DNA of 64,000 bases from positions 124,001 through 188,000 of IMG/VR virus record IMGVR_UViG_3300042549_005931. One strand, given 5' to 3'. Shown here one piece after another: positions 3,820 through 63,594 of this stretch. The position numbers were made by a program, and so were the translations under genes. Numbering within the stretch: the stretch's first letter is position 1; each line of letters begins with the position of its first letter. The notes below the pieces were generated by a model. The model saw only the letters and a list, made by a program, of their open reading frames with translations, was not told the DNA's origin and ran no database searches.

Positions 3820-4200
3820 TTATTTGTTTAATGTAAGTAAATATTTTAATTTTTGGAATAAACCAAGCATTTCATCTCGTAAATTTAAAAGATTTGTATC
3901 TTTTTCATCGATACTGTCAGTCCATTGAACAAAAGATTTACACACGGTTTCTATCATTTCTTCAGGTTTTACATCTCCAATATTTACTAATTCAATTGTA
4001 TTTGTTTCATCATCTAACTGAAATCTACCGTATTGGCCCATTGATTGTTCAACAAATTCATCCATCAAATCTTCCAACGCATCTCTTGTTTTAGCAAACG
4101 CTTTGTGTCTTGCTAAACCTTTAGTTTGCCAATGAAATATTTTCAATTGACTGTGTAATCCTATAAGGAAATTTACATTAGAACTTAAATTCATTTTCAT
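3820..4200 (-). CDS. ferritin/Dps-like four-helix bundle protein
   Basis: HWQTKG..RH.....DALEDLMDEFVE pattern resembles the Dps ferroxidase-centre helices. Confidence 0.7.
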   Translation of the reverse strand: MKMNLSSNVNFLIGLHSQLKIFHWQTKGLARHKAFAKTRDALEDLMDEFVEQSMGQYGRFQLDDETNTIELVNIGDVKPEEMIETVCKSFVQWTDSIDEKDTNLLNLRDEMLGLFQKLKYLLTLNK

Positions 4201-4834
4201 TTTCTTCTCCCGTATCGTTAAATGTATCTCTTAATGTTTCTGGTGTAAAATCATTTACATCATCTTTTGTTAAAATGTATTCGTTTTTACCACTTGCTCT
4301 CATTTCTTCTTGTTTTTGTGAAAAGAAATCAGTTGGTTTTTGATTAAATGGATATGAATCTAATGAACGCATTTCCAATTTTTCTTGTGGTGTTTCAGGT
4401 TTCATTTGTTTTACCTCAGCACCTAATTGCTCAATCTTTTGAACTAAAGTATCCATCTCAGATAATTTGGATGCCAAGTCATCAAGTTTAGTAAATACAT
4501 CGTCCATTTTACCGATAACAGTTGAATTGTCGTTTTGTGTTCCCTCAATGTCTTTCTTAAGACTCTTAGTCATATTAACTAAGTCTGTAATATCGATTTC
4601 TTCTGTATCACCCATTGCCGGGTCTGCAGGTACGTCCATTGGTGCAGGTGCTTCACCACCTAATGCCGGGTCCGCAGGTGCTCCACCCAATGCTGGGTCA
4701 ACAGGTGCTGCCGCAGCATCTAATGCCGGGTCTGCCGGTGGTAGTGGTGCTTCTTGTTCCACTATCATTTTCTTAGCGTATTTGTTAATCGCATTATAAC
4801 GATTTAGTTCTTCTTGTAGTTTGTTTTCTAACAT
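4178..4834 (-). CDS. acidic Pro/Ala-rich protein, putative internal head protein
   Basis: N-terminal LQEELNRYNAI helix, IVE site, PADPAL repeats, coiled coil. Confidence 0.65.
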   Translation of the reverse strand: MLENKLQEELNRYNAINKYAKKMIVEQEAPLPPADPALDAAAAPVDPALGGAPADPALGGEAPAPMDVPADPAMGDTEEIDITDLVNMTKSLKKDIEGTQNDNSTVIGKMDDVFTKLDDLASKLSEMDTLVQKIEQLGAEVKQMKPETPQEKLEMRSLDSYPFNQKPTDFFSQKQEEMRASGKNEYILTKDDVNDFTPETLRDTFNDTGEENENEFKF

Positions 4835-4837
4835 GGC

Positions 4838-5041
4838 TTAATCTTGTAATAATTGTCTACCGTCGTTGGTAATATATTTTTTATTTATTCTTTCGACTAT
4901 TCCGTCTTTTTCTCTGATAGTATAACATTCTCCTGTTACCATATCACACTCTTCTCTTTCCATTCCATCGTTAGATGTGTTTCTAACTTGTTTTGGAGTT
5001 AAGAATTGGTCCATTGCGTTGTTAATTCTTGAATTATTCAT
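4838..5041 (-). CDS. small hypothetical protein (67 aa, CDMVTGEC motif)
   Basis: Intact ORF preceded by TATTTATA at 5053-5060. Confidence 0.7.
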   Translation of the reverse strand: MNNSRINNAMDQFLTPKQVRNTSNDGMEREECDMVTGECYTIREKDGIVERINKKYITNDGRQLLQD

Positions 5042-5081
5042 AACATTTTTATTATAAATATCTGTAATTAGTTAATATTCA

Positions 5082-34528: not shown

Positions 34529-34529
34529 T

Positions 34530-35201: not shown

Positions 35202-35896
35202 TTTTAAACAATGTTGTCCTTAAAATAATTGAGGAACAAAATATTAATACAAGTAAAACAAGACCTATTATTAACGCGATTAAAAATAGGAACAAGATTT
35301 CTTTTTATTACAAAGGACCAACAAGACCTAAAAAAACAAGTGTTAAACCCGGTTATCGTATTAAAGCTGAAGTGGTTGCATTAGGATTAAGTAAAAAGGG
35401 TAATCTACTTATTAGAGCATTTGTTAAGCCACCATCTACCTCTAAAAAAGGATTCACCAAGACGGGATGGAGAACTTTTATGGTTAGTAGAATGAGCGGT
35501 TTACAAATTACGGATGATGTATTTAATGAAAAAAGACCGGGATATAACGAGGGTGATGATAGAACATTTAGTGTGACTTATGTTAAAACAGATTGGGGCA
35601 CTAAGAGCGAACCAAAATCTATTGAAAAACCACAGGTGGAACCAACACCACAACCAAAACCACCGGTACAGGAACCAACAACTACAGTAGAACCAGAAAA
35701 AACAGAACTACCACAACCAAAACCAGTTGAAAAACCACAGGCGGAACCAACACCACAAGAAGAAAAACCGGAACCTGAAGAGTTACCTCAACCAAAACCT
35801 GAAGAAAAACCATTAGAAAATCCTGAAGAGGATGAAGATGAGAATCTTATGGAAAATATTAAACGAATAAAAGGTTTAATGTTATTGTTAAATTAA
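35198..35896 (+). CDS. stand-alone WYL-domain protein with Pro/Glu-rich tail
   Basis: AIKNRNKISFYY..G.R.......LG....GN.LIRAF....GWRTFMVSRMSGLQIT matches the WYL fold; no HTH. Confidence 0.75.
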   Translation: MILNNVVLKIIEEQNINTSKTRPIINAIKNRNKISFYYKGPTRPKKTSVKPGYRIKAEVVALGLSKKGNLLIRAFVKPPSTSKKGFTKTGWRTFMVSRMSGLQITDDVFNEKRPGYNEGDDRTFSVTYVKTDWGTKSEPKSIEKPQVEPTPQPKPPVQEPTTTVEPEKTELPQPKPVEKPQAEPTPQEEKPEPEELPQPKPEEKPLENPEEDEDENLMENIKRIKGLMLLLN

Positions 35897-48409: not shown

Positions 48410-48922
48410 ATGAAAAATTTAAATCAAATCATTAAAACTCAACTTAGAAAAGTTATTGAGGAACAAGAAACTGAGAACTATATGTTTTTTGGTAATTTAG
48501 AACAAATCAAAAGACAATGTGAATTGTTATTAAGTTTTGATAAACAAATGATTGAAAATTTATTACAAAATGGACACGATTGGGCTGATGACCATGTATC
48601 GGAGGCTAAGAATAATATGGACCAAGTTTTTGATTTTATTATGAATGAAAAAGAAAAAGGTCAAACAGTTAATGAGGCATCATCAGCAGCACAACAAGCA
48701 GCAATTGCTATCAACATGAAGAAGAAAGGTATTAAACCTAAAAACGAATCTGTTGAAATGGAAATTGATGAGAGTAAAAATTGTCCGACAGACCCAGCAA
48801 AATGGGCTGCATCAAAAGCCGCAGCGAAAAGAAAATTTGACGTATATCCTTCAGCATATGCAAATGGATGGGCTGCAAAAAATTATAAAGCTAAAGGTGG
48901 TGGTTGGAAAAAATGTAAATAA
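48410..48922 (+). CDS. modular protein, putative internal head polyprotein
   Basis: IIKTQLRKVIEE tag; basic modules after VNE and IDE sites. Confidence 0.65.
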   Translation: MKNLNQIIKTQLRKVIEEQETENYMFFGNLEQIKRQCELLLSFDKQMIENLLQNGHDWADDHVSEAKNNMDQVFDFIMNEKEKGQTVNEASSAAQQAAIAINMKKKGIKPKNESVEMEIDESKNCPTDPAKWAASKAAAKRKFDVYPSAYANGWAAKNYKAKGGGWKKCK

Positions 48923-48923
48923 T

Positions 48924-49673
48924 ATGAAAATATTAGTATCAAAAGAAGATAAGGATTATATTTTTGAATCAATTAAATCCGGTGAAGTTTTAGCGGAGGA
49001 TTTAAGAAGATGGTTTAAAGAGAAGTGGGTAGATGTATCTAAAAAAGTAGACGGTAAACACCCACCATGTGGTAGAAAAGATGCCGATGGTAAATCATAC
49101 CCAAAATGTAGACCATCTAAAAAAGTTTCTAAAGAAACACCAAAGGTGGCATCATCATATAGTAAAAAAGAAAAAAAATCAATGACTTCTCAAAAGAGAA
49201 GAGCTGAAAAGAAAGACCCTAAAGTTGGTAAAGGAAATAAACCGACAATGACACATTTTGATGAACAAAATCGTAAAAAAATGAATATAACAATTACAGA
49301 AGAACAATTTAAAAGATTGTTTGAAAATAATGAAGAAACTCCCGTATTGATATATGAAGATGAATTTGGTTCTATTGAAAATACTGACTTTGTTGTGGAC
49401 AATTTATTAAACGAAGCTGAATACCAAGGACGTAAAGTACAACTTGGTAAAATAATGCAAGGTGATATTAAAAAATTCAAAGTATACGTTAAAAACGATA
49501 AAGGTAAAGTTGTAAAGGTAAACTTTGGTTTTGGTGGTAAATCCGCTAAAGGTAAGAGAATGGTTATAAAGAAAAATAATCCAGCAAGACGTAAATCATT
49601 TAGAGCTAGACATAATTGTGCAAATCCAGGTCCACGTTGGAAACCAAGATATTGGAGTTGCAAAGCGTGGTAA
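48924..49673 (+). CDS. basic two-module protein, putative internal head polyprotein
   Basis: Start reassigned to MKILV (48924); modules DLRRWFKEKWVD..CG..YPKC and AEYQGRKV..RKSFRARHNC..YWSC..W follow LAE and LNE sites. Confidence 0.7.
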   Translation: MKILVSKEDKDYIFESIKSGEVLAEDLRRWFKEKWVDVSKKVDGKHPPCGRKDADGKSYPKCRPSKKVSKETPKVASSYSKKEKKSMTSQKRRAEKKDPKVGKGNKPTMTHFDEQNRKKMNITITEEQFKRLFENNEETPVLIYEDEFGSIENTDFVVDNLLNEAEYQGRKVQLGKIMQGDIKKFKVYVKNDKGKVVKVNFGFGGKSAKGKRMVIKKNNPARRKSFRARHNCANPGPRWKPRYWSCKAW

Positions 49674-50516: not shown

Positions 50517-52241
50517 TTAACGTAAAGTATCGATAGAGAATGTTTGTAAACCACTTACATTAATTACACCAAAGTAACGGTTGTTAACCATTTTCTTCGC
50601 ATAACGAGTCATGATACCTTTGATAGGTGTGAAGTTAAATGGATTGTACATTGTTGGAGTTAATTGTAATGGTACGTATGGTGCGTAGATGTAACCTGCA
50701 TCCAATAATGACTTACCTTTGTGTCCAATCAAGATTTTTCCTGCTGGGAAGTAAGGGTCACGGAATACTTGGTAACGACCTGCTAATGTACCAACTTTTT
50801 CAATACCCATGTTGTATGAGTCTTGCTCAGGACCTGCGTTTGAAACGTGGAAGTACTCTAAATCGTCAAATACTGCAGAAACTTCTGAAGAAATAACAAT
50901 CCAGTTAGCACCACCTCTCAAAGTAGTCTTGTGGATTTGTGCTGAAATTTGGTTAACTTTAGTAATTAAAGTTTGGTTCCAGTCTTTTTGAGTGTAACCT
51001 TGTAAAGTTGCACCACCGTTTCCACCATATTTCCACTCATTGTAATCCCACTTAGCTGTCCAAGCCGCACCTTTACGTAAATCACGTAAGATTTCACGGT
51101 CAACCTCAGCAGCGATTTGCTCAGATAACAATGCAGTTAATTCTGCTTCAGCATCAATGTTGTGGAACGCTGAAACGTCTTGAGCTAACTCAGGAGACCA
51201 AGAAGCTCTTAATTTTCTTTCAGTTACAGAAACTGTTACAGAATCTAAATCGAAAGAAACCTCACCGATAGCATCTTCAAATTCTAAAGAAGCGTATTGA
51301 CGATAAGTTGCAACAAAGTCAGAACCAACTAAAGTTGAACCTGCAACTGTGTGGTTACTGAAACCTGCTGTAGATGAATAAGTTTGTAAATCAACGTTTA
51401 AGTAGATTACACCATTAGCATCACAAATGTCATTATATTGACCAGTAATACCTGCAGATTTTGTTCCGTATTCTACAATACCTTTACCGTATTTTTGAGT
51501 TACCACAGTAAATGGTAAAGCCGCACCCGATTGAACTTGTGCCGCTGAGATAGCCAAAGAAGCTAAGAATTCTTCAGTATCCATTTCGTTTCCGTTAGGA
51601 CCCGCTAATTTACCTGCACCACCACTAGTGAAACCTGATAACTTAACGATAACAGAACTTAAAGAAGTACCTGTAGTTCCTGTGTAAGCACTTTCAACAC
51701 CTGAAGCGAAAGTAACGATTGATGTTCCAGTTAAAGAAATTGTTGAATAATCACCTTTTGAGTAATCAAACAATCCTGAATCAGCAGCATCTGAAGTTTC
51801 ATAGAAACGGTCATAAAGATTAGTTCCTGTGTAACCAGTTGTTGCAGATGTTCCACCAGCACCACCAGGGATACCGTATGGAGAATAGTGTGCTCCTGCA
51901 TTTCTTTCCTGAATTTTAGGAATGAAATAGAATAATTTACCGATAGGTAAGTTCATAGCCTGAACTGAAACGATATCGTTCGCTAATAATTTAGAGAATA
52001 CACGACGGATGATAGGGAATACCACTGTCTCGAATGAACCTGAAGCGTCAGATACTGCTGCTTCGTTGATTAAGTAAGACGCTTGGTTTTCATATAATTG
52101 CGCGATGTTATCTCTTTGGTGACCGTTAAGACCTTCTAAAAAGCCTAAATCATCCCATTTTTTGATGGTATCTTCTTTGATAACACGAAGGTGCTTAAGA
52201 CCGATGTTACCAACCATACCTGATTCTAATAATGCTCCCAT
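50517..52241 (-). CDS. major capsid protein (T4 gp23-like)
   Basis: VSVQAMNLP.G, RKLRASWSPELAQD..AFH.IDAEAEL, YAPYVPL, P.KGIMTRY. Confidence 0.97.
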   Translation of the reverse strand: MGALLESGMVGNIGLKHLRVIKEDTIKKWDDLGFLEGLNGHQRDNIAQLYENQASYLINEAAVSDASGSFETVVFPIIRRVFSKLLANDIVSVQAMNLPIGKLFYFIPKIQERNAGAHYSPYGIPGGAGGTSATTGYTGTNLYDRFYETSDAADSGLFDYSKGDYSTISLTGTSIVTFASGVESAYTGTTGTSLSSVIVKLSGFTSGGAGKLAGPNGNEMDTEEFLASLAISAAQVQSGAALPFTVVTQKYGKGIVEYGTKSAGITGQYNDICDANGVIYLNVDLQTYSSTAGFSNHTVAGSTLVGSDFVATYRQYASLEFEDAIGEVSFDLDSVTVSVTERKLRASWSPELAQDVSAFHNIDAEAELTALLSEQIAAEVDREILRDLRKGAAWTAKWDYNEWKYGGNGGATLQGYTQKDWNQTLITKVNQISAQIHKTTLRGGANWIVISSEVSAVFDDLEYFHVSNAGPEQDSYNMGIEKVGTLAGRYQVFRDPYFPAGKILIGHKGKSLLDAGYIYAPYVPLQLTPTMYNPFNFTPIKGIMTRYAKKMVNNRYFGVINVSGLQTFSIDTLR

Positions 52242-52277: not shown

Positions 52278-53456
52278 TTATTTTATTTTTGACATCAAAT
52301 CCTTCATTCTTTTGAATTGTGGATTTTCGTACGCCTTTGATTCCGCTAACATTTCTTTAGAAGATGATGTTGTTGGAGTGTTAGAAATTTTATTAGCCAC
52401 TGTTTCTGTTATAGGGTTTTTAGTTTCTAACTCATTTTTTATTGTATTGAAAAGTGCTTTTGATTCGTTCATATTATTGATACCATCAAATCTCTTCAAT
52501 ATGTTTAATTTTTCTTGTTTTGTAGTTGAATGTTCTGTGAACAAACGAGTTGAATATGCTAAGTTTGCGTTGAAAACTGCAACCTCGTTAAGTTTTTCCT
52601 TGAATAAAACTAAGGCTTTCTTATATTCACCATTTTGTTTTTTCAATTTTTCAACTTCTTCGTTAATTGCTCCTGAACCTGCTTTGTATTTTGTTTTACT
52701 ATCTAAACCAGCTCTGTCTTGACCACCTTTGTTGCCATGTACATTTGATTTAGTTCTTGCAGCTTCTTCCATTTCTTCTTCTTTAGAATCATCATCTTCT
52801 TCATCTAATTCGATTTCGTAGATAACCTCATCCTCAGTCATTTCAACGTCATAAGACATATCATCACCTTCTAACATATCATCATCATCATATGACATAT
52901 CATCTTCTTCGGCAATCTCTTCACCATCTTCGTCATCGAGTTTAATGATATAATCATTATCTCCATCACTGAAGTGAACAGAGTCACCATCTTTCTTTAC
53001 GATAATACCATCTTCAGGTTTCATAGCTTTGAATACTTTCATTACTTCTTCATCAGAAGCTCCTGTCATATCCATTGCATCATCTTCATCTTCAAAAGGA
53101 TTCTCATCTTCTTCACTTTCTGAAGAATACTCATCGTCTTCTCCTTCTTCTGAATCTAAATCTTCACCTTCCTCAGAATCTAATCCTGCTGGCATTTCGT
53201 TATCAAGGTTTTCTTCTCCTTCAGCATCTTCAGCACCTTCTTCATCGGCACCTTCGTCTGACATGTCATCTGTTTCCTCTTCTTCAGGATTTGGTTGCTC
53301 AGCAACGTCTTCCTCTTTTTCCATACTTTCTTTAAGCAAGTCATTTAGTTCTTGTTTCATTGTTGAAGCAAGTATACCCTTTGCATTTTGCTTTACTGCT
53401 TCTTCAAGTGTTTGTACTTGAAGTAACGCTTGTTCTAAAATTGATTTTTCAGTCAT
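52278..53456 (-). CDS. prohead core / scaffolding protein (gp22-like)
   Basis: Highly acidic with coiled coils; lies between protease and MCP. Confidence 0.8.
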   Translation of the reverse strand: MTEKSILEQALLQVQTLEEAVKQNAKGILASTMKQELNDLLKESMEKEEDVAEQPNPEEEETDDMSDEGADEEGAEDAEGEENLDNEMPAGLDSEEGEDLDSEEGEDDEYSSESEEDENPFEDEDDAMDMTGASDEEVMKVFKAMKPEDGIIVKKDGDSVHFSDGDNDYIIKLDDEDGEEIAEEDDMSYDDDDMLEGDDMSYDVEMTEDEVIYEIELDEEDDDSKEEEMEEAARTKSNVHGNKGGQDRAGLDSKTKYKAGSGAINEEVEKLKKQNGEYKKALVLFKEKLNEVAVFNANLAYSTRLFTEHSTTKQEKLNILKRFDGINNMNESKALFNTIKNELETKNPITETVANKISNTPTTSSSKEMLAESKAYENPQFKRMKDLMSKIK

Positions 53457-53537: not shown

Positions 53538-54221
53538 TTATTTAGATAAAAATTTGTCTAAACCACCCATTAATTTTTTCATTCTGTCATTAAGTTCAGG
53601 TTTCTCTTGTATAGACTCTTGATATTGGTCTCTATCTGCTGGGTCATTAAATACATATGCCCCCGGTGTAGATGGAGACGACACTAAGTCAAAACATACT
53701 AATTCAAAATCATCTTGAACAATATTTTGACCTCTTTCACTTTTTAATGAACCAACACCACGTGATGATATACCTAAAGTTGCACCATTCATGATTAACA
53801 TTGCCGCTTGGTCACCTTTAGTAGAAACAATACCCATCTTCTTCCAACCTGGAGAAGTGAATAACTTTATTTTACCCATTAATATTTTTCCATCCCAATA
53901 TGTTTCAAGAATTGAATGGGATACTCTATCTAAGTCGATAAGAGATGATGATGGGTGATTTAACTCATTAAGAGCACCACCTTTTTTAATAAGTGTTTGA
54001 TATTTTTCTACTTCTCTTTTAAGAAGCATTTCAGGATAGATTCTCCCGTTCTTATTTGGTGTATCGTATTTCTGTAAAACAGCATAAAGGATAAGGTCTT
54101 CTGAAAAGTCCATATCCCTCATCTCTGATATAATTTTTTTATTGTCGTCAGGGGACACATGACCCGCGTCATATTCAATAAGAATACCTTTCCCTGTTTC
54201 GTTCGGACCTAAAATCTTCAT
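53538..54221 (-). CDS. prohead protease (T4 gp21-like)
   Basis: NKNGRIYP, ELNHP, VSH, GISSRGVGS, DLVSSPSTPGA. Confidence 0.95.
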   Translation of the reverse strand: MKILGPNETGKGILIEYDAGHVSPDDNKKIISEMRDMDFSEDLILYAVLQKYDTPNKNGRIYPEMLLKREVEKYQTLIKKGGALNELNHPSSSLIDLDRVSHSILETYWDGKILMGKIKLFTSPGWKKMGIVSTKGDQAAMLIMNGATLGISSRGVGSLKSERGQNIVQDDFELVCFDLVSSPSTPGAYVFNDPADRDQYQESIQEKPELNDRMKKLMGGLDKFLSK

Positions 54222-54976: not shown

Positions 54977-54991
54977 ACAAGACCATTTTTT
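54958..54991. terminator. bidirectional terminator spanning two convergent stop codons
   Basis: AAAAAATGGTCTTG-ATTAAA-CAAGACCATTTTTT perfect 14-bp stem. Confidence 0.75.
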
Positions 54992-55710
54992 AATTGTACC
55001 AATCTGTAATAATTAAATTTCGATGGTTTCATTTCATTAACCTCGTCTTTTACTTTGGTTAATTTACCGGTTAAATCATTATCTTTAGACTCACTCAGGA
55101 TATTACCTACTTGACCTAAAATAGATTCTTTTAAATCACTTATTTTAACTTCAAGGTCTTCGTCCGTTAAAGATAAAATACCCTGTAATTCTTTTTTCTG
55201 TGATTCATTTAATGAATTATTATATAATACATTAAAATTGTTTGCTAATACTGCATATAGAAGATTTTCATTTTCTACTAATTGTGTTTCTTCTTTTTTA
55301 ACGATTTCTTTTTTTGTTGTTAAATGTTCTACTAATTTTTTCTTCGCAATAATTTTTTTGTCAACATTACTTAAATTTTCTTCTTGAACTAATAAGTCTA
55401 AGTTTGAATATAATTCGTTTTCGTTAATTTCTACGTTTTTTAACTTTGTATTTAAATTTTTTGTGAAACTTGCGATTTTATCTGACTTGTCTTTTAAGAC
55501 CGATTGAATTTCTTCTACATACAGTTTAGCTATTTCTTTATCATCGAAGTATTTGTTTTCGATTTCTTCATAAAACAAATACATTTCTTTGAAATCTTTG
55601 TTTTCTTTAATTGTATTTAAGATATCCTTAACTTCACCTTTATTCTTGTTTGAATAAGATTCAGTTAGTTTCTTTAATATCTTTGTTTTTAATATTCCAA
55701 ATTTGTTCAT
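54973..55710 (-). CDS. head-module hypothetical protein (245 aa)
   Basis: Helical K/E-rich ORF directly downstream of portal; LTE, LNE, LKE and LSE sites. Confidence 0.7.
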   Translation of the reverse strand: MNKFGILKTKILKKLTESYSNKNKGEVKDILNTIKENKDFKEMYLFYEEIENKYFDDKEIAKLYVEEIQSVLKDKSDKIASFTKNLNTKLKNVEINENELYSNLDLLVQEENLSNVDKKIIAKKKLVEHLTTKKEIVKKEETQLVENENLLYAVLANNFNVLYNNSLNESQKKELQGILSLTDEDLEVKISDLKESILGQVGNILSESKDNDLTGKLTKVKDEVNEMKPSKFNYYRLVQLKNGLV

Positions 55711-55712: not shown

Positions 55713-57527
55713 TTAGTCGTTTAATATGTCTGTTATTTTAGTTTCTATTTCATAAATATTCTGTTGTGCTTTATTCATATCAAATAAGATATTAAAATCT
55801 TCTTTTTCCTCACCTAACATACCTAATATTTTTGATTTTCTTGAAGTAGATTCACTTAATGGTTCCGCAGCAGGTGCTTCGGCAGGTGCTCCACCACCCA
55901 TATCCATTCCACCACCGGCAGCAGCTTCACCACCACCTGCGGCAGCTTCAGCCTTTTCTCTTTCTTCCTCAGGGATACCATACTTAGCATCCACATTGTC
56001 GAAGATACCTGAACGTTTAATGATTAACTGACTCGTATTCATTAATTCGAAACCAACCGCTCTTTCAAGACGTTGTTGTTGTAAATCAAGTAATACTTCA
56101 GCATCACTCATACCAAGAATATTTTTCTTAGCCCATGTATGAGACACCGGTAAAATACCCATTTGAGATTGGTCAGATGTTGCATCCTTATAAAGAGTAA
56201 CCTTTTCTTTCCATTGTTCAATACGTAATAAATCAGATTGTGCTGATGGATTAGTTAAACCTAACGTAAAGTTATTTAATTCATCCTCTAAACCTAATAG
56301 ATACAAGTGAACTAATGCTATTTTATTTAACTCTTGAATAACTGATTTTTGAATTCTGTTAATTGTACGAGCAAAACGAATATCCATTAATGCTAAACTC
56401 TTACCTTCACCAACAACCTCTTCAAAACCTAAGAAAGCTTTTGGTATACGTAAAGCTGCAAGTAGTTTCTTTTGAATATATTCAATATCGGCAATTTCAC
56501 CTAAGTTTGTTGCTCCGGGTAATGTATCGATTGGACTTGGAGCTGCAGGGTCACGTACAGGGATAAAATAATCTTGGTCTACTGACATTTGATTATATCT
56601 CATATCTACCTGACCATTACGTGGGTCGGATATTTGGTCTCTTTTGAATTTACTTGCCACACGTTGTACATAAGCTTCAATATCTTTATCATCCATGTTA
56701 CCCACAAATATTTTAAAGATACGTCTTTCAGGTGCTCTTGATGTTCTATAAATTAACATCGCATCTTCAGCAAGAAGTAATTGTTTCCAAATACGTCTAA
56801 TCTTATCTAACATAGAAGTACCATAAGGTAATTTTCTATCGTCACCTAAAATTCTAAAGTGTGCAACTTCCCAAGCTTGGAATTCCATATCTTTATTCTT
56901 CCAATGGAATCTCAATTCACGTGACGGCATTTTAACATCTCTAGCTTGTCCCGCAGTTTTACTTGATGCGCCTTCCAATCTTTCAATTTCAATGTTTGGT
57001 AATTGTTGACACCCAATGATACCCTTTTCAGGGTCAATTTTTAAGTATACAAAGTTATCCCCATACTTACATAGACCTCTTGTCCACATTTGTAAGTTGG
57101 TGTTAACATCTAATACGTTTTTGAATAAGTCATCAAGGATATTCTTTACTCTTGTTGATTCAGAAAATATTGTTAATATTTCACCCTTCTCAGACATTGT
57201 GGTTGATTCTTCAGCATAGATATCTAAAGCTGCGGAAATCTCCGGAGTAAATTCCATAGATTCATAATCATAATATGCAGCCAATCTATTTGGTTCGTAA
57301 TAAACCGATTGGTTATATAATGATTGGTCAAGTTTAGCCCATTTATCAGCAATGTACTGACTTTGTTGAGCTTGTAATAACGCCTTTTCGTATTCTTCTC
57401 TACTATCGGTCTTTAATAATTCGTCTTTTGAGAAACTAAATGATGGTACTTGGTCGGGTCTTGTTTTCCCCGGATATCCAAACATCTTGGTCAATTTCTG
57501 AAAAACTGTAAAATTCTGTTCTGCCAT
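55713..57527 (-). CDS. portal protein (T4 gp20-like)
   Basis: PEISAALDIYAEE, EDAMLIYRTSRAPERRIFKI.VGN, DYFIPVR, IDTLPG, ALRIPK. Confidence 0.96.
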   Translation of the reverse strand: MAEQNFTVFQKLTKMFGYPGKTRPDQVPSFSFSKDELLKTDSREEYEKALLQAQQSQYIADKWAKLDQSLYNQSVYYEPNRLAAYYDYESMEFTPEISAALDIYAEESTTMSEKGEILTIFSESTRVKNILDDLFKNVLDVNTNLQMWTRGLCKYGDNFVYLKIDPEKGIIGCQQLPNIEIERLEGASSKTAGQARDVKMPSRELRFHWKNKDMEFQAWEVAHFRILGDDRKLPYGTSMLDKIRRIWKQLLLAEDAMLIYRTSRAPERRIFKIFVGNMDDKDIEAYVQRVASKFKRDQISDPRNGQVDMRYNQMSVDQDYFIPVRDPAAPSPIDTLPGATNLGEIADIEYIQKKLLAALRIPKAFLGFEEVVGEGKSLALMDIRFARTINRIQKSVIQELNKIALVHLYLLGLEDELNNFTLGLTNPSAQSDLLRIEQWKEKVTLYKDATSDQSQMGILPVSHTWAKKNILGMSDAEVLLDLQQQRLERAVGFELMNTSQLIIKRSGIFDNVDAKYGIPEEEREKAEAAAGGGEAAAGGGMDMGGGAPAEAPAAEPLSESTSRKSKILGMLGEEKEDFNILFDMNKAQQNIYEIETKITDILND

Positions 57528-57580
57528 TTATATAAATACTTTTTTTTATAATATAAACTAAATTATTAGTAATGGAAATA

Positions 57581-59365: not shown

Positions 59366-59369
59366 ATAG

Positions 59370-59377
59370 TATAAATA
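59370..59377 (-). promoter_or_regulatory. putative late promoter TATTTATA (one representative of about 20 copies)
   Basis: 4 nt before the TerL ATG and directly after a terminator; see findings for the other copies. Confidence 0.7.
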
Positions 59378-59378
59378 C

Positions 59379-59405
59379 AAAAAAAGGAGGTTAAACGCCT
59401 CCTTT
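59379..59405 (-). terminator. rho-independent terminator
   Basis: AAAGGAGG-N7-CCTCCTTT with a T tract on the minus strand. Confidence 0.8.
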
Positions 59406-59425
59406 ATTGTTTGTAGTCATAATGA

Positions 59426-60964
59426 TTACCTAAATTGATTTAAGAAATCTTCGTCAGATTCCTCATCATCTAAGTCGTCTTTTGAAAGTGATATTCCTTT
59501 ATCACCTAAAAAACCATTTAAATCATTTAATAATTGGTCATCATTTGTATTGTTTGACATGGAGTCAAGTTCCGTTTGATATTGTTCCATTGCATCTTCA
59601 TAATCCTCATCACGTAACATTTTAACAATACCTCCATAGATTAATGCGATTAGTCGTTTACCTCTATCCGTTTCACCCATTATTTCTTTCATTAATACCA
59701 AGAATTTTTTTGCCGGTAATGCAAAAATTTCCATCATGATATAGTTTTGAAGATTTTTATTTTGTTCTTCTAAAGTCTCTATTGGGAACGACTCATATAA
59801 TCTACGCCAAATTGCAGGTCCTAAACGTAAATCCCATATTTCATACGACAGCAATTCTTGTTTATCTCTAATTTCGGTATACATACCTTTTGATGGTTGA
59901 CCTTCTAATGCCAAAGTTTTCATCAAACCCTTTAATATTTCATGAATTAATACAGGGAAATTAACACCTTTAACTATGATATTTGTTTTTTCGGGGTCAA
60001 TTCTTGGGTCATTTGGTGTAAAATCATCCTCATCATCCTCAGGTTCATCCATATCACCACCCCCCATCATATCCCCTTCAAACTCATCGTCATCATCATC
60101 GTTCCCTGAAGTTGGTCTAACAACATCAACTCTACCGGCAATTGAACCTGCCTGAGCCATTTCTAAGTTAGCAGCACTAAATTGCCAATAATTTAAATCA
60201 TTAACTGACATCATCACACCATATAAATTGAATAATTGGTCTGAACCTGTAATTTGACGTAATCTTTCACCTAAAAGTTGGTACATCCAATGACCTTTTT
60301 TAGAAGAACCCGCAACTATCGCTTTAATTAAACGAAGCTTTGATTCTTCTAATTCTTGAGATGAATCCACATTTTGAACATCTTGAAATAACTCCATTTC
60401 CATTTCTTGATTTTCAGGTGTAATGTTGGCGATTTCTTCATCTGATAACATTTCCTCATCACTAACATCGGGGCTTTCTTGTTTTGCCGGTGAAATTTGT
60501 CCACCCATTTTAAAACCTTCTGAATTAGGATGACCCATATCTACAATAAATTTTATTTTATTTTCAATATTATCAGGTAATCCCATTTCTTTTTTAACCA
60601 CCTCAATTGCTAAATCAATAAGCTCCTGATGATAATTGCGTTCAAGTCTTTGAATTTCTGTATGTGCATTTATCATCATCATACCTAATGGTCCCATATT
60701 TTGACCAACAATTGGTCCTTGATATTGAGTTATTTGTCTAACTTTATCAACTACCTCCTTATATCTTTCAGAAGCTAAAAGTTCAAGAAAATTTTGGTTA
60801 GCCCTACCTGTTTCTGGTGTTGGAACAATACTAAGCGGTGTATTACCCGCTTCAAGGTCCCTATCAACATCAGGGTTTGGTCTTTCAGGTCCTTCGTAGT
60901 CAATTGCCATCTCTTGTAAATTTTGTTTCACCAAAGATAACAATTCTTTCTTTGTAACTTTCAT
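59426..60964 (-). CDS. acidic hypothetical protein, putative head core protein (512 aa)
   Basis: MKVTKKELLSLVKQNLQE tag; internal HEILKG; upstream of TerL. Confidence 0.65.
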   Translation of the reverse strand: MKVTKKELLSLVKQNLQEMAIDYEGPERPNPDVDRDLEAGNTPLSIVPTPETGRANQNFLELLASERYKEVVDKVRQITQYQGPIVGQNMGPLGMMMINAHTEIQRLERNYHQELIDLAIEVVKKEMGLPDNIENKIKFIVDMGHPNSEGFKMGGQISPAKQESPDVSDEEMLSDEEIANITPENQEMEMELFQDVQNVDSSQELEESKLRLIKAIVAGSSKKGHWMYQLLGERLRQITGSDQLFNLYGVMMSVNDLNYWQFSAANLEMAQAGSIAGRVDVVRPTSGNDDDDDEFEGDMMGGGDMDEPEDDEDDFTPNDPRIDPEKTNIIVKGVNFPVLIHEILKGLMKTLALEGQPSKGMYTEIRDKQELLSYEIWDLRLGPAIWRRLYESFPIETLEEQNKNLQNYIMMEIFALPAKKFLVLMKEIMGETDRGKRLIALIYGGIVKMLRDEDYEDAMEQYQTELDSMSNNTNDDQLLNDLNGFLGDKGISLSKDDLDDEESDEDFLNQFR

Positions 60965-60967
60965 TTT

Positions 60968-61990
60968 TTATTTTTTATTTTTTACTAATTTATCTTCTTT
61001 TAATGCATCGGGTCTTGGATTAGGTCCAGGTCCCGGTTGGAATGGAGTACGTCTTTTTGGTTTTTGACCTGGTTTTACTTTTGGTGGTGCCTTAACAGGT
61101 GCAGGTTGTTGTTCTGCAACTTCCAACGCAACCGGATAGTCTTTTTTCTTTTCCTCTTTTTTCTTTGGATTTGTTTTAGGTTCCTCAGGTTCATTGAATC
61201 TTCTCATTGGGTCATTTTTATATGGTCCTCTAAATGGGTCGATTGGGTCGTTGTCTCTTTTTCTCTGTGGTAATTTAAATTCATCTAATTCCATTACAGC
61301 ATCAGGTCTTGGATTAGGTCCAGGTCCCGGTTGGAATGGAGTACGTCTTTTTGGTGTTGTACCCGGCTTAGTCTTTGGTGGCGCGATTACGGGTGCGGGA
61401 TTGTTACCAGTTATTGATTTAGATGAAAACCATTCAGGAATACCATTGTGACCCTTTGTTACATTTGGTCCAAATTCGTGAATTTCTGATTCATTTAATT
61501 TCATTGAGATTAATTCCATGATTTCGTTTTTAGATGTGAAACTGTGATAATTTGTTTCAGCTAAGTTACCAACCCACTCATTAATTTCCAACTGTGATTC
61601 TTTTAAACATTTATCTTTCAAAGAATTTAATGTACAATCGTGTTTCTTCATGTATTTGAAGATATCCAATTTCATTTCTTTTCTTGACGGTTCTTCACCA
61701 CCTTTAATATGATTCCAAATTTTAGAAATTTCATCAGACTTCAATGTATCAACATCATTTAATCCACCTTCTTCTTTTTCTCGTAATTCAACATTCATAC
61801 CAGAATCGGTAACTTTTTTAATGTCACTTGGATTACTACCCTTTCTCATTATCACAGCACCTCTACCGGTTGATTGTTCACCTAACATTCTTGATGATAA
61901 ATCATTAAGTTGTTTATCGGTGAAGTTAACTAAAGTTTTCTCTGAGAATCCTTCGTTTATCATTTTCTGAATTATTTCGTTTCTTTTCAT
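60968..61990 (-). CDS. modular protein with a duplicated Pro-rich basic peptide
   Basis: Two copies of PAPVxAPPKxKPGxxPKRRTPFQPGPGPNPRPDA; many (L/I)xE sites. Confidence 0.7.
   Translation of the reverse strand: MKRNEIIQKMINEGFSEKTLVNFTDKQLNDLSSRMLGEQSTGRGAVIMRKGSNPSDIKKVTDSGMNVELREKEEGGLNDVDTLKSDEISKIWNHIKGGEEPSRKEMKLDIFKYMKKHDCTLNSLKDKCLKESQLEINEWVGNLAETNYHSFTSKNEIMELISMKLNESEIHEFGPNVTKGHNGIPEWFSSKSITGNNPAPVIAPPKTKPGTTPKRRTPFQPGPGPNPRPDAVMELDEFKLPQRKRDNDPIDPFRGPYKNDPMRRFNEPEEPKTNPKKKEEKKKDYPVALEVAEQQPAPVKAPPKVKPGQKPKRRTPFQPGPGPNPRPDALKEDKLVKNKK
61005..61355. repeat. 57-bp intragenic direct repeat (one mismatch)
   Basis: Copies at 61005-61061 and 61299-61355, 294 bp apart and in frame. Confidence 0.9.
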
Positions 61991-62388
61991 TAGTCTTTGA
62001 ATTTTATTTCTTCATTTATTAGAAGATAACTTCTAAATTTTAATTTCTTTGTAACACTATCAATTGATTCACCGAATTTAAATGTTAATCTTTCTTCATC
62101 CGAGTCAATATCAAATTTTTCCCATGCTAAAGCAACTACACCATCTACAGCGTCAATAACTCCGAAATAATCGGAGTCTTGAACTAATTCTAACTGTAAA
62201 TCTGTGTCTTTTAATAATCCCACGGTATCAACGTATTCAACGTCAGGGGATTTTGATGATACTTCTAAAGAAGCGGGAATTGTAAACCACTCATCCATGT
62301 CAATCTCAGTACTTGTACTAAAAATGAACTCATACTGTTTTTGACCCTTATAATCGGAACCAATTTCGTTGACATAGATGAGGTGCAT
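61990..62388 (-). CDS. hypothetical protein (132 aa)
   Basis: Intact, coupled ORF. Confidence 0.7.
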   Translation of the reverse strand: MHLIYVNEIGSDYKGQKQYEFIFSTSTEIDMDEWFTIPASLEVSSKSPDVEYVDTVGLLKDTDLQLELVQDSDYFGVIDAVDGVVALAWEKFDIDSDEERLTFKFGESIDSVTKKLKFRSYLLINEEIKFKD

Positions 62389-62391
62389 TGT

Positions 62392-63594
62392 TTACTTAAA
62401 ATATTTTGATAATGTTGTGTGAATATTATTGTTAATTTCGTTTTTAATTTCGTCTAAGTCGATTTCAACTTCATCTTCCATAATATCATCATCTTCCATT
62501 ATTTCTTCATCTTCCATTATTTCTTCATCTTCCATAGATTCTTCCCCACTTAAACTTGGTGATACGTAATCTGGTTTGAAATCAAACATACTATCATCAA
62601 TAGCTTCTTCATCTAAGTCAGCGTAATCATTGATGTTAAATTCGTACATTTCTTCTTCATTATCTAATCCTGATAAATCTTCCTCGTTAAAGTCTGTATA
62701 TTCTTCATCAATTGATGAATTAATAAAACTTTCTAAAGCGTCCATTGGATTTGATTCTTCACCTAATTCTTCATCAGCTGCGACAGGCTCTTCTGCAGGT
62801 AATTCCTCACCGCCAAGTTCTTCACCCCCAAAATTATCTTCTCCACCCTCAACTGCTCCTTGTTCTTCATCTCTTTCAAATTTTTCTGCAATGTCTTCGA
62901 TATCTTCATCGTCTAATTTGTCTAAATCAACTGCGGAAATAATCATATTAAGAATGTACTTAATATCATCACTTTCCATTTTATCTTTAATATCTCTTAA
63001 TTCTTGACCTAATCTACCAGCATGTTTTTGAGCTTCTGACATATAATCAGAACGTTTTCCTTCTGAAGGTGCTTCTTCTTCACCACCCATGTCTTCACCA
63101 CCTTCCACAGGAGGTAATTCAGGTAATGGTTCTTCACCTGCAGGAGACTCACCACCCTCTGCCGGTGGCATTGGAGGTAATGCCTCATCCGCAACTGGTT
63201 CTTCAGGCATTGCAGGTACAGGTGCTGGTGCTTCAGCTTGTGCTGGCTTATCAGTTTTTAAAACATATTTTGTAGCTTCGTTAATTAACTCTTCTTGACC
63301 TTTAATTAATTCAAGACGTTTAACCGCTTCAGCATATGATGAAAACTTATTTTTGTTCTTCATGAACATTCCTCCGATATAGTCAAGAGAATTTTCATTC
63401 AATCCTCTCTTTACATAGTATCCGTCTTTTTCTTTAACGACACCATATACACCACCTGTCTTAGATTCTGCTACAACCTCAGCTTTCGATGTATTTTTTT
63501 TATTATCGGTTTTGTAGTATGCCAATTCAAGGATTCTTTTTAATTTGTCATCCCCATTGAGCTTCTCACTACCAAGTGGTTTTAAATCTGCCAT
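62392..63594 (-). CDS. very acidic protein, putative prohead core protein (400 aa)
   Basis: KLKRILEL helix, LINE site, E/D/P-rich linkers; TATTTATA at 63629-63636. Confidence 0.65.
   Translation of the reverse strand: MADLKPLGSEKLNGDDKLKRILELAYYKTDNKKNTSKAEVVAESKTGGVYGVVKEKDGYYVKRGLNENSLDYIGGMFMKNKNKFSSYAEAVKRLELIKGQEELINEATKYVLKTDKPAQAEAPAPVPAMPEEPVADEALPPMPPAEGGESPAGEEPLPELPPVEGGEDMGGEEEAPSEGKRSDYMSEAQKHAGRLGQELRDIKDKMESDDIKYILNMIISAVDLDKLDDEDIEDIAEKFERDEEQGAVEGGEDNFGGEELGGEELPAEEPVAADEELGEESNPMDALESFINSSIDEEYTDFNEEDLSGLDNEEEMYEFNINDYADLDEEAIDDSMFDFKPDYVSPSLSGEESMEDEEIMEDEEIMEDDDIMEDEVEIDLDEIKNEINNNIHTTLSKYFK

What the first reader, a model, noticed from the sequence alone, without database searches (positions are those of the whole stretch)
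4178..63594. Shared amphipathic tags plus (L/I/V)-x-E sites on many unrelated proteins: candidate capsid-cargo addressing system
Seen: otherwise unrelated proteins carry one of two short helices. Type A ('xx-E-hydrophobic-x-R/K-hydrophobic-K-x-L'): LFEEIEKIKKLI (34031 C-term), LMENIKRIKGLM (WYL C-term), ENPQFKRMKDLM (scaffold C-term), ELNDRMKKLM (protease C-term), LQEELNRYNAI (4834 N-term), DDKLKRILEL (63594). Type B (N-terminal helix ending in hydrophobic-x-E): FIKQVIEE (33265), VVLKIIEE (35198), IIKTQLRKVIEE (48410), ELLSLVKQNLQE (60964), plus internal ITITEEQFKRLFE (48924). Most of these genes sit behind the TATTTAT motif. Known: T4 gp21 cleaves after (L/I)-x-E and T4 internal proteins use a cleavable capsid-targeting peptide; the MCP here has LINE|A at residue 60. 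Inference: this phage uses a portable tag resembling the scaffold/protease terminus to load a large, dispersed set of cargo proteins into the prohead, then releases them by proteolysis for ejection.
Basis: partly seen in the sequence, partly recalled or inferred. Interest (0 to 1): 0.8.

Follow-up and report, generated by a model that had tools for sequence, protein, structure and literature searches.

The report
Shared scaffold-like tail tag on phage proteins
In an uncultured freshwater jumbo phage with a T4-type head, the scaffold, the head protease and at least two unrelated proteins end in the same short conserved helix sitting just after a protease-type cut site, which most likely addresses them to the assembling capsid, whereas the proposed N-terminal tags are only a loose T4-like class that sequence alone cannot prove.

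Summary
The window is part of a 269-kb IMG/VR contig: an AT-rich jumbo myovirus with a T4-type head module (large terminase, portal, gp21-family protease, acidic scaffold, gp23-like capsid protein).

The C-terminal "type A" tag is real. Its core is [KR]-[IM]-K-x-[LI]-[MIL], usually preceded by (L/I)-x-E. It lies at the extreme C-terminus of the scaffold, the protease, gene 34031 (unknown helical protein) and gene 35198 (WYL-fold protein). It stays nearly invariant in relatives while the adjacent linkers diverge. A scaffold-tail profile picks out these families and the Dps-like gene 3820 among 39 families (0 of 20,000 internal control blocks each). The portal tail resembles it marginally. The two N-terminal "type A" instances (4834, 63594) are not type A.

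The "type B" N-terminal helices exist and keep a hydrophobic-x-Glu at their border in homologs. Their mutual similarity is weak, and the DNA polymerase N-terminus scores as well.

Best reading: a scaffold-mimicking C-terminal docking helix, removable by the gp21-type protease, plus T4-like N-terminal propeptides. This is a new variant of known capsid-targeting systems, and no step has been shown experimentally.

The 34031 body domain occurs widely in uncultured phages with tag A or a second terminal motif, which suggests portable terminal modules.

The parts
52281..52322 (-). Scaffold C-terminal tag PQFKRMKDLMSKIK (residues 379-392 of the acidic 392-aa scaffold-like protein, gene 52278-53456)
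   Evidence: Nearly invariant in 100 relatives while the whole protein is about 58% identical. A related tail is present in cultured distant relatives: Mel-JY01 ..VVERMKKLAGIVK and immuto ..VSRWQKLAGIIK. A conserved L-A-E site lies at residues 370-372 upstream.
53541..53594 (-). Prohead protease C-terminal tag LNDRMKKLMGGLDKFLSK (gene 53538-54221, Peptidase_S77)
   Evidence: DRMKKLMGxLDxFLSK is conserved in 114/114 relatives, while the preceding EEKPxxx stretch varies. The scaffold-protease pair is the top C-terminal profile pair of 703. An I-Q-E site at residues 204-206 is 93% conserved.
34484..34525 (+). C-terminal tag LFEEIEKIKKLIIY of the 165-aa protein 34031-34528 (candidate cargo, unknown helical fold)
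   Evidence: L152, F153, E154, K160 and L162 are invariant in alignment A2. LFE152 is the only conserved [ILV]xE site in the family. The AF2 model shows a helical domain at 3-111, a disordered stretch at 119-151 and a helix at 150-164. There is no PDB fold match.
35846..35893 (+). C-terminal tag LMENIKRIKGLMLLLN of the 232-aa WYL-fold protein 35198-35896 (candidate cargo)
   Evidence: L217, E219, K225 and L227 are invariant in A1, while the Pro-rich linker is hypervariable and carries module insertions. AF2 predicts a helix at 213-231 after a disordered stretch at 152-212. The profile score against the 34031 tag is 30.2.
35198..35239 (+). N-terminal helix MILNNVVLKIIEEQ of the same WYL-fold protein (type B)
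   Evidence: E13 is invariant, and IEE at residue 11 is one of only two conserved [ILV]xE sites in the family. AF2 predicts a helix at 2-14 followed by a beta-barrel at 21-130 that matches the WYL domains of PafBC and DriD.
55716..55757 (-). Portal C-terminus IYEIETKITDILND (marginal tag-like tail)
   Evidence: YEIE(T/N)K(I/L)(K/N/T)DILND is conserved. Its profile match to the 34031 tag has P about 0.01, and to the scaffold tail P about 0.04. The regex hits 81 of 129 relatives.
3823..3870 (-). C-terminus MLGLFQKLKYLLTLNK of the DUF5856 (Dps/ferritin-like four-helix bundle) protein 3820-4200; a doubtful tag
   Evidence: It scores 17.3 against the scaffold-tail profile, exceeded by 0 of 20,000 null blocks, and is conserved in 39/39 relatives. 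However, the helix lies inside the Pfam domain and the predicted bundle and is not set on a linker.
33265..33300 (+). N-terminal helix MNNFIKQVIEEK of 33265-34038 (type B)
   Evidence: MNNFIKQVIEEKFASKAQQ is nearly invariant in 22 homologs that are about 48% identical overall. The pair with 35198 is the top N-terminal 10-mer pair in the window.
34530..34568 (+).
   Evidence: The L-A-E site is 90% conserved, and the sequence matches the pattern (hydrophobic)(hydrophobic)-x-E-[QE] within the first 30 residues.
48410..48469 (+). N-terminal helix MKNLNQIIKTQLRKVIEEQE of 48410-48922 (type B)
   Evidence: Homologs keep hydrophobic-x-E before a variable linker and the conserved NYMFF core. Some relatives carry the IKLTEEQLKKVV variant instead.
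49281..49325 (+). Internal MNITITEEQFKRLFE at the domain border of 48924-49673 ('B2' motif)
   Evidence: It is conserved in 22 homologs. In one relative the second domain appears as a separate ORF with the motif near its start, although that ORF could also be a truncation. The same motif is terminal in distant 34031-like proteins.
4751..4834 (-). N-terminal helix of 4178-4834, ending KKMIVEQE before a Pro/Ala-rich region (type B, not type A)
   Evidence: The conserved form is ..RF/YxAINKYxKxLLxEQ(D/E)AP in 20 or more relatives.
60911..60964 (-). N-terminal helix MKVTKKELLSLVKQNLQE of 59426-60964 (type B)
   Evidence: L-x-E-M is 100% conserved in a family only 39% identical overall. Two relatives, L031 and L049, start exactly after this Glu and have stop codons upstream.
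61949..61990 (-).
   Evidence: The N-terminal 34 residues are conserved, while the rest of the protein is 32-42% identical.
63514..63594 (-). Conserved N-terminus MADLKPLGSEKLNGDDKLKRILELAYY of the acidic protein 62392-63594
   Evidence: It is almost invariant in 21 homologs, and I-L-E at residue 21 is 100% conserved. It is not detected as type A.
55660..55710 (-). N-terminus MNKFGILKTKILKKLTE of 54973-55710, which lies between portal and protease, where T4 has gp67 and gp68
   Evidence: L-T-E at residue 15 is 100% conserved. Homologs in immuto and Mel-JY01 occupy the same position after the portal gene.
52062..52241 (-). Predicted propeptide of the gp23-like major capsid protein (residues 1-60, ending LINE|A)
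   Evidence: Conserved sites are LLE4, IKE21, LYE49 and INE58. The protein matches phrog_138 at 1.8e-65. T4 gp23 aligns over this region with a second candidate site, SFE70|T.
53538..54221 (-). gp21-family prohead serine protease
   Evidence: Pfam Peptidase_S77 at 2.4e-21. It is 30% identical to T4 gp21, and the ELNHP and SSRG(L/V)GS motifs align.

Best explanation
This phage builds its head the T4 way. A core of scaffold, gp21-type protease and accessory proteins forms on the portal, the gp23-like shell closes around it, and the protease then cuts after Glu in (L/I/V)-x-E.

The last 12-16 residues of the scaffold form an amphipathic, basic helix with the core [KR]-[IM]-K-x-[LI]-[MIL]. I take this helix to be the docking element of the core. 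It would bind either the inner face or propeptide of the capsid protein, or other copies of itself in a short coiled-coil bundle.

The protease and at least two proteins with no role in morphogenesis carry the same helix at their extreme C-terminus. These are 34031 (unknown helical domain) and 35198 (WYL-type nucleic-acid-binding fold). In each the helix sits behind a disordered linker and a conserved (L/I)-x-E. They would therefore be co-assembled into the prohead and then clipped free of the tag.

A second, looser class of proteins begins with a short helix ending in hydrophobic-x-Glu. It comprises 33265, 34530, 35198, 48410, 4178, 59426, 60968, 62392 and 54973. This is the same layout as the N-terminal propeptides and capsid-targeting sequences of T4 head proteins.

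What is shown: the motifs, their terminal position, their conservation against diverging surroundings, their co-occurrence in nine genomes, the protease family, and the shared promoter-like element.

What is inferred: binding, packaging, cleavage and ejection.
For: Positional enrichment: 4 of 6 regex hits lie in the last 15 residues, and 277 of 511 hits in related ORFs are C-terminal and fall almost entirely in five families.

Conservation: the tags hold while the linkers vary.

Profile tests:
- The scaffold-tail profile finds 34031, 35198, 3820 and the protease, each exceeded by 0 of 20,000 null blocks, followed by a sharp drop in score.
- The scaffold-protease pair is the best of 703 C-terminal profile pairs.

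Cut sites: the only fully conserved [ILV]xE sites in the diverged families lie at the tag borders. These are 34031 LFE152, 35198 IEE11 and LME217, and 59426 LQE16.

Structure: AF2 models show a terminal helix, a disordered linker and a folded core.

Protease: Peptidase_S77, with the catalytic motifs shared with T4 gp21.

Modularity: natural 59426 homologs start exactly after the predicted cut.

Co-occurrence: all five tags are present together in 9 genomes.

Expression: operons of tagged genes share the TATTTAT element with the portal, protease, scaffold and sheath genes.

Precedents:
- The T4 capsid-targeting sequence directs proteins to the scaffolding core and is removed by gp21 (PMC3012670, PMC5694885).
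- The SPN3US protease C-terminal region is proposed to target that enzyme into the prohead (PMC7411985).
- Scaffold coat-binding regions are C-terminal, and HSV capsid protein binds the 25 C-terminal residues shared by UL26 and UL26.5 (PMC12005531).

T4 head proteins themselves start with degenerate hydrophobic-x-E peptides: MNEPQLLIE, MLKEQLIAE and MAKINELLRE.
Against: - There is no experimental or proteomic evidence. The phage is uncultured, and none of the tagged proteins has a homolog in a cultured phage.
- On single sequences the C-terminal similarity is within the range of other K/E/I-rich pairs. Leave-one-family-out PSSMs recover only 35198 above the 95% null.
- Type B similarity is weak, and the DNA polymerase N-terminus scores alike.
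- In Microcystis phage Mel-JY01 only the scaffold has the tail, so sharing the tag is not a general rule.
- The scaffold tail is almost invariant, so no co-variation between scaffold and cargo tags could be measured.
- The receptor of the tag is unknown.
- The 3820 helix is part of its fold.
- The tag of the 34031 family is far older and more widespread than this clade, so it may serve a family-specific function.
Confidence: 0.55

Rival explanations
1. The C-terminal helix is a membrane-targeting amphipathic helix of the MinD/FtsA kind. It would bring the scaffold, the protease and a few other proteins to the inner membrane, where T4-type and giant-phage proheads assemble. It would not be a capsid-addressing signal.
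For: The tags are C-terminal, basic and amphipathic, with a hydrophobic moment in the 76th-97th percentile of window 14-mers and a net charge of 0 to +4. SPN3US proheads accumulate on the inner membrane (PMC7411985). The resemblance to MinD-type tails is from my own knowledge only.
Against: Membrane-targeting helices tolerate wide sequence variation. Here specific residues (R/K, I/M, K, L, M) are shared across unrelated families and are invariant within them. The portal-type tail is acidic, with net charge -3. The adjacent conserved (L/I)-x-E is not explained by this model.
Confidence: 0.12
2. The helix is a generic short coiled-coil (zipper) oligomerisation element. It would have been acquired independently, or exchanged between the neighbouring genes 34031 and 35198, and its likeness to the scaffold and protease tails would be convergent and without a shared partner.
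For: The core hexapeptide RIKKLI occurs in the literature only in engineered GCN4 isoleucine zippers. The 34031-35198 tags are far more alike (30.2) than either is to the scaffold (18-20), and the two genes are separated by a single gene. The tag ends 47 of 150 representative clusters of the 34031 family in many other phages.
Against: Four families match the scaffold-tail profile, each exceeded by 0 of 20,000 null blocks, and all matches are at the extreme C-terminus. A conserved cut-site-like triplet lies next to the tag in every family. The tagged genes share promoter-like elements with head genes.
Confidence: 0.15
3. For type B only: the N-terminal helices are ordinary first helices of K/E/I-rich proteins in an AT-rich genome. 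In that case the hydrophobic-x-Glu is compositional, and there is no N-terminal addressing tag.
For: [ILV]xE occurs 355 times in 20.4 kaa and is not enriched at N-termini (39 against 30 expected). The unbiased N-terminal profile comparison places no type B pair at the top. The DNA polymerase, SNF2 helicase and terminase families also keep an N-terminal [ILV]xE.
Against: The pattern (hydrophobic)(hydrophobic)-x-E-[QE] has 6 of its 20 hits in the first 30 residues, against 1.7 expected (P 0.005). The site is the only conserved one in very diverged families. Homologs of 59426 begin exactly after it. The proven T4 set is equally degenerate.
Confidence: 0.4

Closest known systems
T4 capsid targeting sequence (CTS) and gp21-processed N-terminal propeptides (IPI-III, Alt, gp22, gp24, gp67, gp68)
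   Same: The protease family is the same (Peptidase_S77), and so is the head gene order. Short N-terminal peptides end in (L/I)-x-E on head-associated and unrelated proteins, and the targeting peptide is removed after assembly (PMC3012670, PMC5694885).
   Different: The T4 internal proteins share a near-identical 10-residue CTS. Here the N-terminal helices are only loosely alike. The strongest shared peptide here is C-terminal, for which I found no T4 counterpart. T4 gp22 ends differently, and gp21 ends ..AEAMKKAL.
C-terminal capsid-binding or targeting regions of scaffolds and maturation proteases (HSV UL26/UL26.5, P22 gp8 hook, HK97 gp4, SPN3US gp245)
   Same: A C-terminal element is shared by scaffold and protease. 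Basic residues lie on a short helix, and the element is proposed to dock to the shell or core (PMC12005531, PMC7411985; the HK97 example is from my own knowledge).
   Different: In herpesviruses the shared tail arises from nested genes. Here separate genes carry it, and it also ends non-morphogenetic proteins, a WYL-fold protein and an unknown helical protein.
Encapsulin cargo-loading peptides
   Same: A short C-terminal peptide on a flexible linker is attached to unrelated cargo proteins and presumed to bind the interior of an HK97-fold shell. A ferritin-like protein (3820) is among the candidates.
   Different: This is a DNA-packaging tailed phage with a portal, a scaffold and a protease. 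The tag sequence does not resemble the encapsulin consensus as I recall it. The tag is predicted to be cut off. The 3820 helix is part of its fold.
Propeptide-bearing ejection and inner-body proteins of giant phages (phiKZ, 201phi2-1, SPN3US)
   Same: These are jumbo myoviruses in which many head proteins are processed after Glu by a gp21-related protease, and the propeptides are proposed to act as targeting signals (PMC5694885, PMC7411985).
   Different: Those propeptides are mostly more than 100 residues long and N-terminal, with an A/S/G-x-E motif. Here the peptides are 12-28 residues long, lie at either end, and use hydrophobic-x-E.

Membership tests
T4-type CTS / gp21-processed propeptides | The phage encodes a gp21-family (S77) prohead serine protease with the catalytic His and Ser motifs | tested here: met
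   Pfam PF03420 at 2.4e-21. BLASTP against T4 gp21 gives 30% identity at 2e-21, with ELNHP and SSRG(L/V)GS aligned.
T4-type CTS / gp21-processed propeptides | A 10-20-residue N-terminal peptide ends in (L/I)-x-E directly before the body of the protein | tested here: met
   Conserved sites are IEE9 (33265), IEE11 (35198), LQE16 (59426), LTE15 (54973), ILE6 and LEE17 (scaffold) and LIE14 (protease). The 4178 and 48410 families were checked by inspection.
T4-type CTS / gp21-processed propeptides | The same peptide sequence is shared by otherwise unrelated internal proteins | tested here: inconclusive
   Profile similarity among the N-termini is weak (P 0.003-0.05), and the DNA polymerase scores alike. 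Only the 33265-35198 pair stands out.
T4-type CTS / gp21-processed propeptides | The peptide is cleaved in proheads and is sufficient to package a foreign protein | not testable with these tools
   This needs virion proteomics and a reporter-fusion assay in a cultured relative.
Scaffold/protease shared C-terminal capsid-docking element | Scaffold and protease carry a related sequence at the extreme C-terminus | tested here: met
   RMKDLM against RMKKLM. This is the top pair of 703 C-terminal profile pairs, scoring 23.6 against a 99.9% null of 22.6. It is conserved in 100 and 114 relatives respectively.
Scaffold/protease shared C-terminal capsid-docking element | The element is under stronger constraint than its surroundings | tested here: met
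   The scaffold is about 58% identical overall while its tail is nearly invariant. The protease linker varies while its tail is fixed. The scaffold tail is related to those of immuto and Mel-JY01.
Scaffold/protease shared C-terminal capsid-docking element | The element binds the major capsid protein or the core | not testable with these tools
   No multimer prediction or binding assay is available.
Encapsulin-like cargo-loading peptide | A short C-terminal peptide on a disordered linker is attached to unrelated cargo proteins | tested here: met
   34031 is disordered at 119-151 and helical at 150-164. 35198 is disordered at 152-212 and helical at 213-231. The two bodies are unrelated: a WYL-like barrel and a helical domain with no PDB match.
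Encapsulin-like cargo-loading peptide | A shell without portal, scaffold or genome packaging, and a peptide matching the encapsulin consensus | tested here: not met
   The locus encodes a portal, a large terminase, a scaffold and a protease. This is therefore an analogy and not membership. The consensus comparison itself was not run.
Membrane-targeting amphipathic helix (MinD/FtsA type) | A C-terminal amphipathic basic helix in which only the physico-chemical pattern is conserved | tested here: inconclusive
   The hydrophobic moment lies in the 76th-97th percentile. However, specific residues are invariant within and shared between families, which is not typical of such helices.

The most novel reading that the evidence does not exclude
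Uncultured aquatic phages may use a small vocabulary of portable terminal peptides as addresses that load diverse non-structural proteins into the prohead. Tag A would be E-E-I-x-R-I-K-x-L-M, copied from the scaffold tail. A second motif, I-x-I-(S/T)-E-E-Q-(L/F)-x-x-L, works at either end. This would be a phage counterpart of encapsulin cargo-loading peptides. The cargo here would include a WYL-type nucleic-acid-binding protein and perhaps a Dps-like ferritin, released by the gp21-type protease and ejected with the DNA.
Probability: 0.25. Interest if true: 0.85.

Novelty: new variant of a known kind. Interest (0 to 1): 0.6.

Why it matters
If the C-terminal helix is a scaffold-mimicking address, the set of proteins a phage injects could be read directly from uncultured genomes. 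At present that requires virion proteomics. It would also point to a WYL-fold protein as injected cargo, possibly with a role in counter-defence. A tail tag of 12-16 residues would be a compact handle for loading foreign proteins into large T4-type capsids, complementing the N-terminal T4 CTS. Finally, it would link three known principles in one system: scaffold C-terminal docking, protease targeting and encapsulin-style cargo peptides. This phage lineage is abundant, with 537 relatives of the protease in IMG/VR.

Tried and rejected
- PHROGs and Pfam on the tagged proteins gave almost nothing. The exceptions were a weak WYL hit, DUF5872 and DUF5856.
- tblastn of 59426 and 35198 against cultured phages found no usable homologs. 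megablast of 17 kb found no match.
- A word-based homolog search for 35198 returned 922 proteins, none with an informative name among the 120 listed.
- Leave-one-family-out 14-column PSSMs were overfitted to family-specific flanks and recovered only 35198 above the 95% null.
- Pairwise 10-mer BLOSUM comparison of single termini was not discriminating in this K/E/I-rich proteome.
- A test for co-variation between cargo and scaffold tags was uninformative because the scaffold tail is invariant.
- The fold search for 34031 found no match. phmmer of 3820 against the PDB found nothing.
- The 8 kb beyond the window's right end held no obvious further tagged genes. It encodes a ClpB-like protein, an Hsp20 and proteins with signal peptides.
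- Mel-JY01 has no 34031 or 35198 homologs, and no second protein with its scaffold tail.
- I considered and rejected a clamp-binding motif. The polymerase tail is unrelated, and the motif carriers are head proteins.
- I considered and rejected a degradation tag, because the last residues vary.

Full report
**Context**

The window corresponds to bases 124001-188000 of IMGVR_UViG_3300042549_005931, a 269-kb contig. It is 29-35% G+C and carries no tRNA genes.

It encodes a T4-type head module on the minus strand:
- large terminase, 57581-59380;
- portal, 55713-57527;
- two small proteins, 54973-55710 and 54257-54682;
- a gp21-family protease, 53538-54221;
- an acidic scaffold-like protein, 52278-53456;
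- a gp23-like major capsid protein, 50517-52241.

It also encodes tail sheath, tail tube and baseplate hub proteins and a family B DNA polymerase. No cultured phage is close. The best capsid-protein matches are Rhodothermus phage RM378, Flavobacterium phage immuto and Microcystis phage Mel-JY01, at 30-44% identity. The lineage is nevertheless abundant, with 537 IMG/VR stretches encoding a relative of the protease.

**The observation**

I treated the two tag types separately.

**Type A, the C-terminal tag**

Position in the window:
- The pattern [KR][ILM][KR].[LI][MIF] occurs six times in the 20,399 residues of the window proteome.
- Four of those hits lie in the last 15 residues of a protein: 34031, 35198, the scaffold and the protease.

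Conservation in relatives. I fetched 238 related loci. In them the tag sits at the extreme C-terminus of every protease (114/114), every scaffold (100/100), every 35198 homolog (31/31) and 29 of 34 homologs of 34031.
- The scaffold is only about 58% identical across relatives, yet AYENPQFKRMKDLMSKIK barely changes.
- In the protease the stretch just before the tag varies, while DRMKKLMGxLDxFLSK is fixed.
- In the 35198 family the invariant columns are E13, the core of the fold, and L217, E219, K225 and L227 of the tag. The Pro-rich linker between them is hypervariable and even takes up whole inserted modules.
- In the 34031 family L152, F153, E154, K160 and L162 are invariant.

Statistics:
- Single-sequence tests are weak. 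Pairwise 10-mer scores between termini fall within the range of other K/E/I-rich pairs. Leave-one-family-out PSSMs are overfitted.
- At the level of family profiles the signal is clear. The scaffold-protease pair is the best of 703 C-terminal pairs.
- With the scaffold tail as the a priori query, the four best of 39 families are 34031 (19.6), 35198 (18.2), 3820 (17.3) and the protease (17.0). None of 20,000 internal blocks reaches any of these scores. The next family scores 12.1.
- The tags of 34031 and 35198 score 30.2 against each other.

The portal tail, YEIE(T/N)K(I/L)xDILND, is a marginal relative (P 0.01-0.04).

**Cut sites at the tag borders**

I asked which (I/L/V)-x-E triplets are kept in at least 80% of homologs.
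- In the strongly diverged families very few are kept, and they fall at the tag borders.
- 34031 keeps only LFE152.
- 35198 keeps only IEE11 and LME217.
- 59426 keeps LQE16 and one other.
- The scaffold, protease and portal each have such a site just upstream of their tails (LAE370, IQE204, IYE591).

The protease is a true gp21 relative with the His and Ser motifs. The T4 rule of cleavage after Glu in (L/I)-x-E is therefore a fair expectation, but it is an inference.

Structure predictions agree with a tag-on-a-leash layout.
- 35198 has a helix at 2-14, a confident beta-barrel at 21-130 that matches the WYL domains of PafBC and DriD, a disordered stretch at 152-212 and a helix at 213-231.
- 34031 has a helical domain at 3-111 with no PDB match, a disordered stretch at 119-151 and a helix at 150-164.

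**Type B, the N-terminal helices**

Homologs of 33265, 35198, 48410, 59426 and, as I found, 4178, 34530, 60968, 62392 and 54973 all begin with a short helix that ends in hydrophobic-x-Glu. This helix is often much better conserved than the rest of the protein.

Points in favour:
- The pattern (hydrophobic)(hydrophobic)-x-E-[QE] has 6 of its 20 hits in the first 30 residues, against 1.7 expected (P 0.005).
- Two natural homologs of 59426 start exactly at the residue after the conserved Glu, with stop codons just upstream. This marks the spot as a module border.

Points against:
- The bare triplet is not enriched at N-termini.
- Unbiased profile comparison places no type B pair at the top.
- The DNA polymerase N-terminus scores as well as the proposed members.

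The experimentally established T4 set is equally degenerate: MNEPQLLIE, MLKEQLIAE, MAKINELLRE and MEGLIE. Small head-module proteins of immuto and Mel-JY01 begin the same way. Type B is therefore plausible as a T4-like class of propeptides, but sequence alone can neither prove nor refute it.

**Expression context**

TATTTAT is a genuine upstream element. Of its 38 copies, 21 lie in the right orientation within 60 nt of a start codon, against 0.9 expected.
- It precedes the sheath, tube, portal, protease and scaffold genes.
- It also heads the operons 4838-4178-3820, 33265 to 35198, 48410-48924 and 62392 to 59426.
- It also precedes an SNF2 helicase and a PhoH gene, so it is not purely structural.

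**Wider distribution**

- The scaffold tail is old. Mel-JY01 ends ..VVERMKKLAGIVK and immuto ends ..VSRWQKLAGIIK.
- In the complete Mel-JY01 genome no other real gene carries this tail. It also has no 34031 or 35198 homolog. Sharing of the tag with the protease and cargo is therefore specific to the lineage.
- A profile of the 34031 family finds 390 representative clusters among 1.84 billion proteins.
- In the best 150 clusters, a relaxed tag A occurs 49 times, and 47 of those lie in the last 26 residues.
- Other members end in a different domain.
- Still others end in, or begin with, the motif I-x-I-(S/T)-E-E-Q-(L/F)-x-x-L. This is the same motif as the internal ITITEEQFKRLFE of gene 48924 and the N-terminus of some 48410 homologs. 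It was terminal in all six regex hits.
- Two relatives also carry tag-like tails on a 340-aa protein and on a GDSL-like 221-aa protein.

These data fit portable terminal modules. They also show that tag A is not private to this clade's head.

**Mechanism**

I commit to the following model, at about 0.55. The scaffold tail is the docking helix of the prohead core. The protease, 34031 and 35198 mimic it and are co-assembled. The gp21-type protease then removes the tags at the adjoining (L/I)-x-E.

There are two candidate partners:
- the inner face or propeptide of the capsid protein, as with the P22, HSV and HK97 precedents (PMC12005531);
- self-association as a short coiled coil. The core hexapeptide RIKKLI appears in the literature only in GCN4 isoleucine zippers.

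The rivals are a membrane-targeting helix, a generic zipper with no shared partner, and, for type B, plain composition.

**Comparison and novelty**

The closest known systems are:
- the T4 CTS (PMC3012670, PMC5694885);
- the C-terminal targeting regions of scaffolds and proteases (PMC7411985, PMC12005531);
- giant-phage propeptides;
- by analogy only, encapsulin cargo-loading peptides.

The new element is a scaffold-like C-terminal peptide on unrelated, non-morphogenetic proteins of a T4-type phage, combined with a cut-site-like triplet. That makes it a new variant of a known kind. All functional steps remain to be shown.

Noticed in passing
window 54788-54976 (+): A ribosomal protein S21 gene (Pfam PF01165, 7.7e-12) sits inside the head module on the opposite strand, behind a TATTTAT element. 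Mel-JY01 also has rpsU in its head module, between protease and scaffold.
   Followed up: partly
window 48410-48922 and 48924-49673 (+): Pfam DUF5872 is split across two adjacent genes in different reading frames. Profile positions 1-39 match the C-terminus of the first gene and 40-115 match the N-terminus of the second. The two-gene arrangement is conserved in relatives.
   Followed up: partly
window 3820-4200 (-): A DUF5856 protein predicted as a Dps/ferritin-like four-helix bundle (structure match TM 0.75 to Dps). It lies in one operon with the Pro/Ala-rich protein 4178, and its last helix matches the scaffold-tail profile.
   Followed up: partly
window 34530-35201 (+): This protein consists of four tandem repeats of about 47 residues (..YDSNNPNALSNGDDKGKGD..GS..DIQNRI.NL.KN.YN). 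It lies between the two type A cargo genes.
   Followed up: no
window 60968-61990 (-): The protein has a conserved N-terminal domain and two copies of a Pro-rich basic repeat (..KPG..PKRRTPFQPGPGPNPRPDA). Its length varies widely among relatives, from 190 to 440 aa.
   Followed up: no
L031:1710 and L049:958 (homologs of window 59426-60964): Two relatives encode the 59426-family protein without the N-terminal helix. They start at the residue after the conserved L-x-E and have stop codons immediately upstream.
   Followed up: yes
L161:1-8700 (contig bases 187.7-196.4 kb, just right of the window): This stretch encodes a ClpB-like AAA+ chaperone (673 aa), an Hsp20-like protein, and two proteins with signal peptides, one with a long Ser/Ala/Lys/Glu low-complexity region.
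   Followed up: no
L101:8844-9866, L103:16031-17053 and L186:4630-5295: Relatives carry extra proteins with tag-like C-termini that have no counterpart in the window. One is a 340-aa protein ending ..SIEMLDKLKEMFK. The other is a 221-aa GDSL-like protein ending ..LLDKIKKML. Neither has a Pfam assignment.
   Followed up: partly
proteins P0121-P0270 (representatives of the 34031 family): The 34031 N-terminal domain (MN.xL...Y.IP..I) is widespread in uncultured phages and is combined with at least three alternative C-terminal endings. P0225 carries the I-x-I-S-E-x-Q motif at both ends.
   Followed up: partly
window, 38 copies (for example 33242, 48399, 53476, 54236, 57532, 63630): TATTTAT is a strongly positioned upstream element. 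Of 38 copies, 21 lie oriented within 60 nt of a start codon, against 0.9 expected. It is probably the late or middle promoter core of this lineage.
   Followed up: partly
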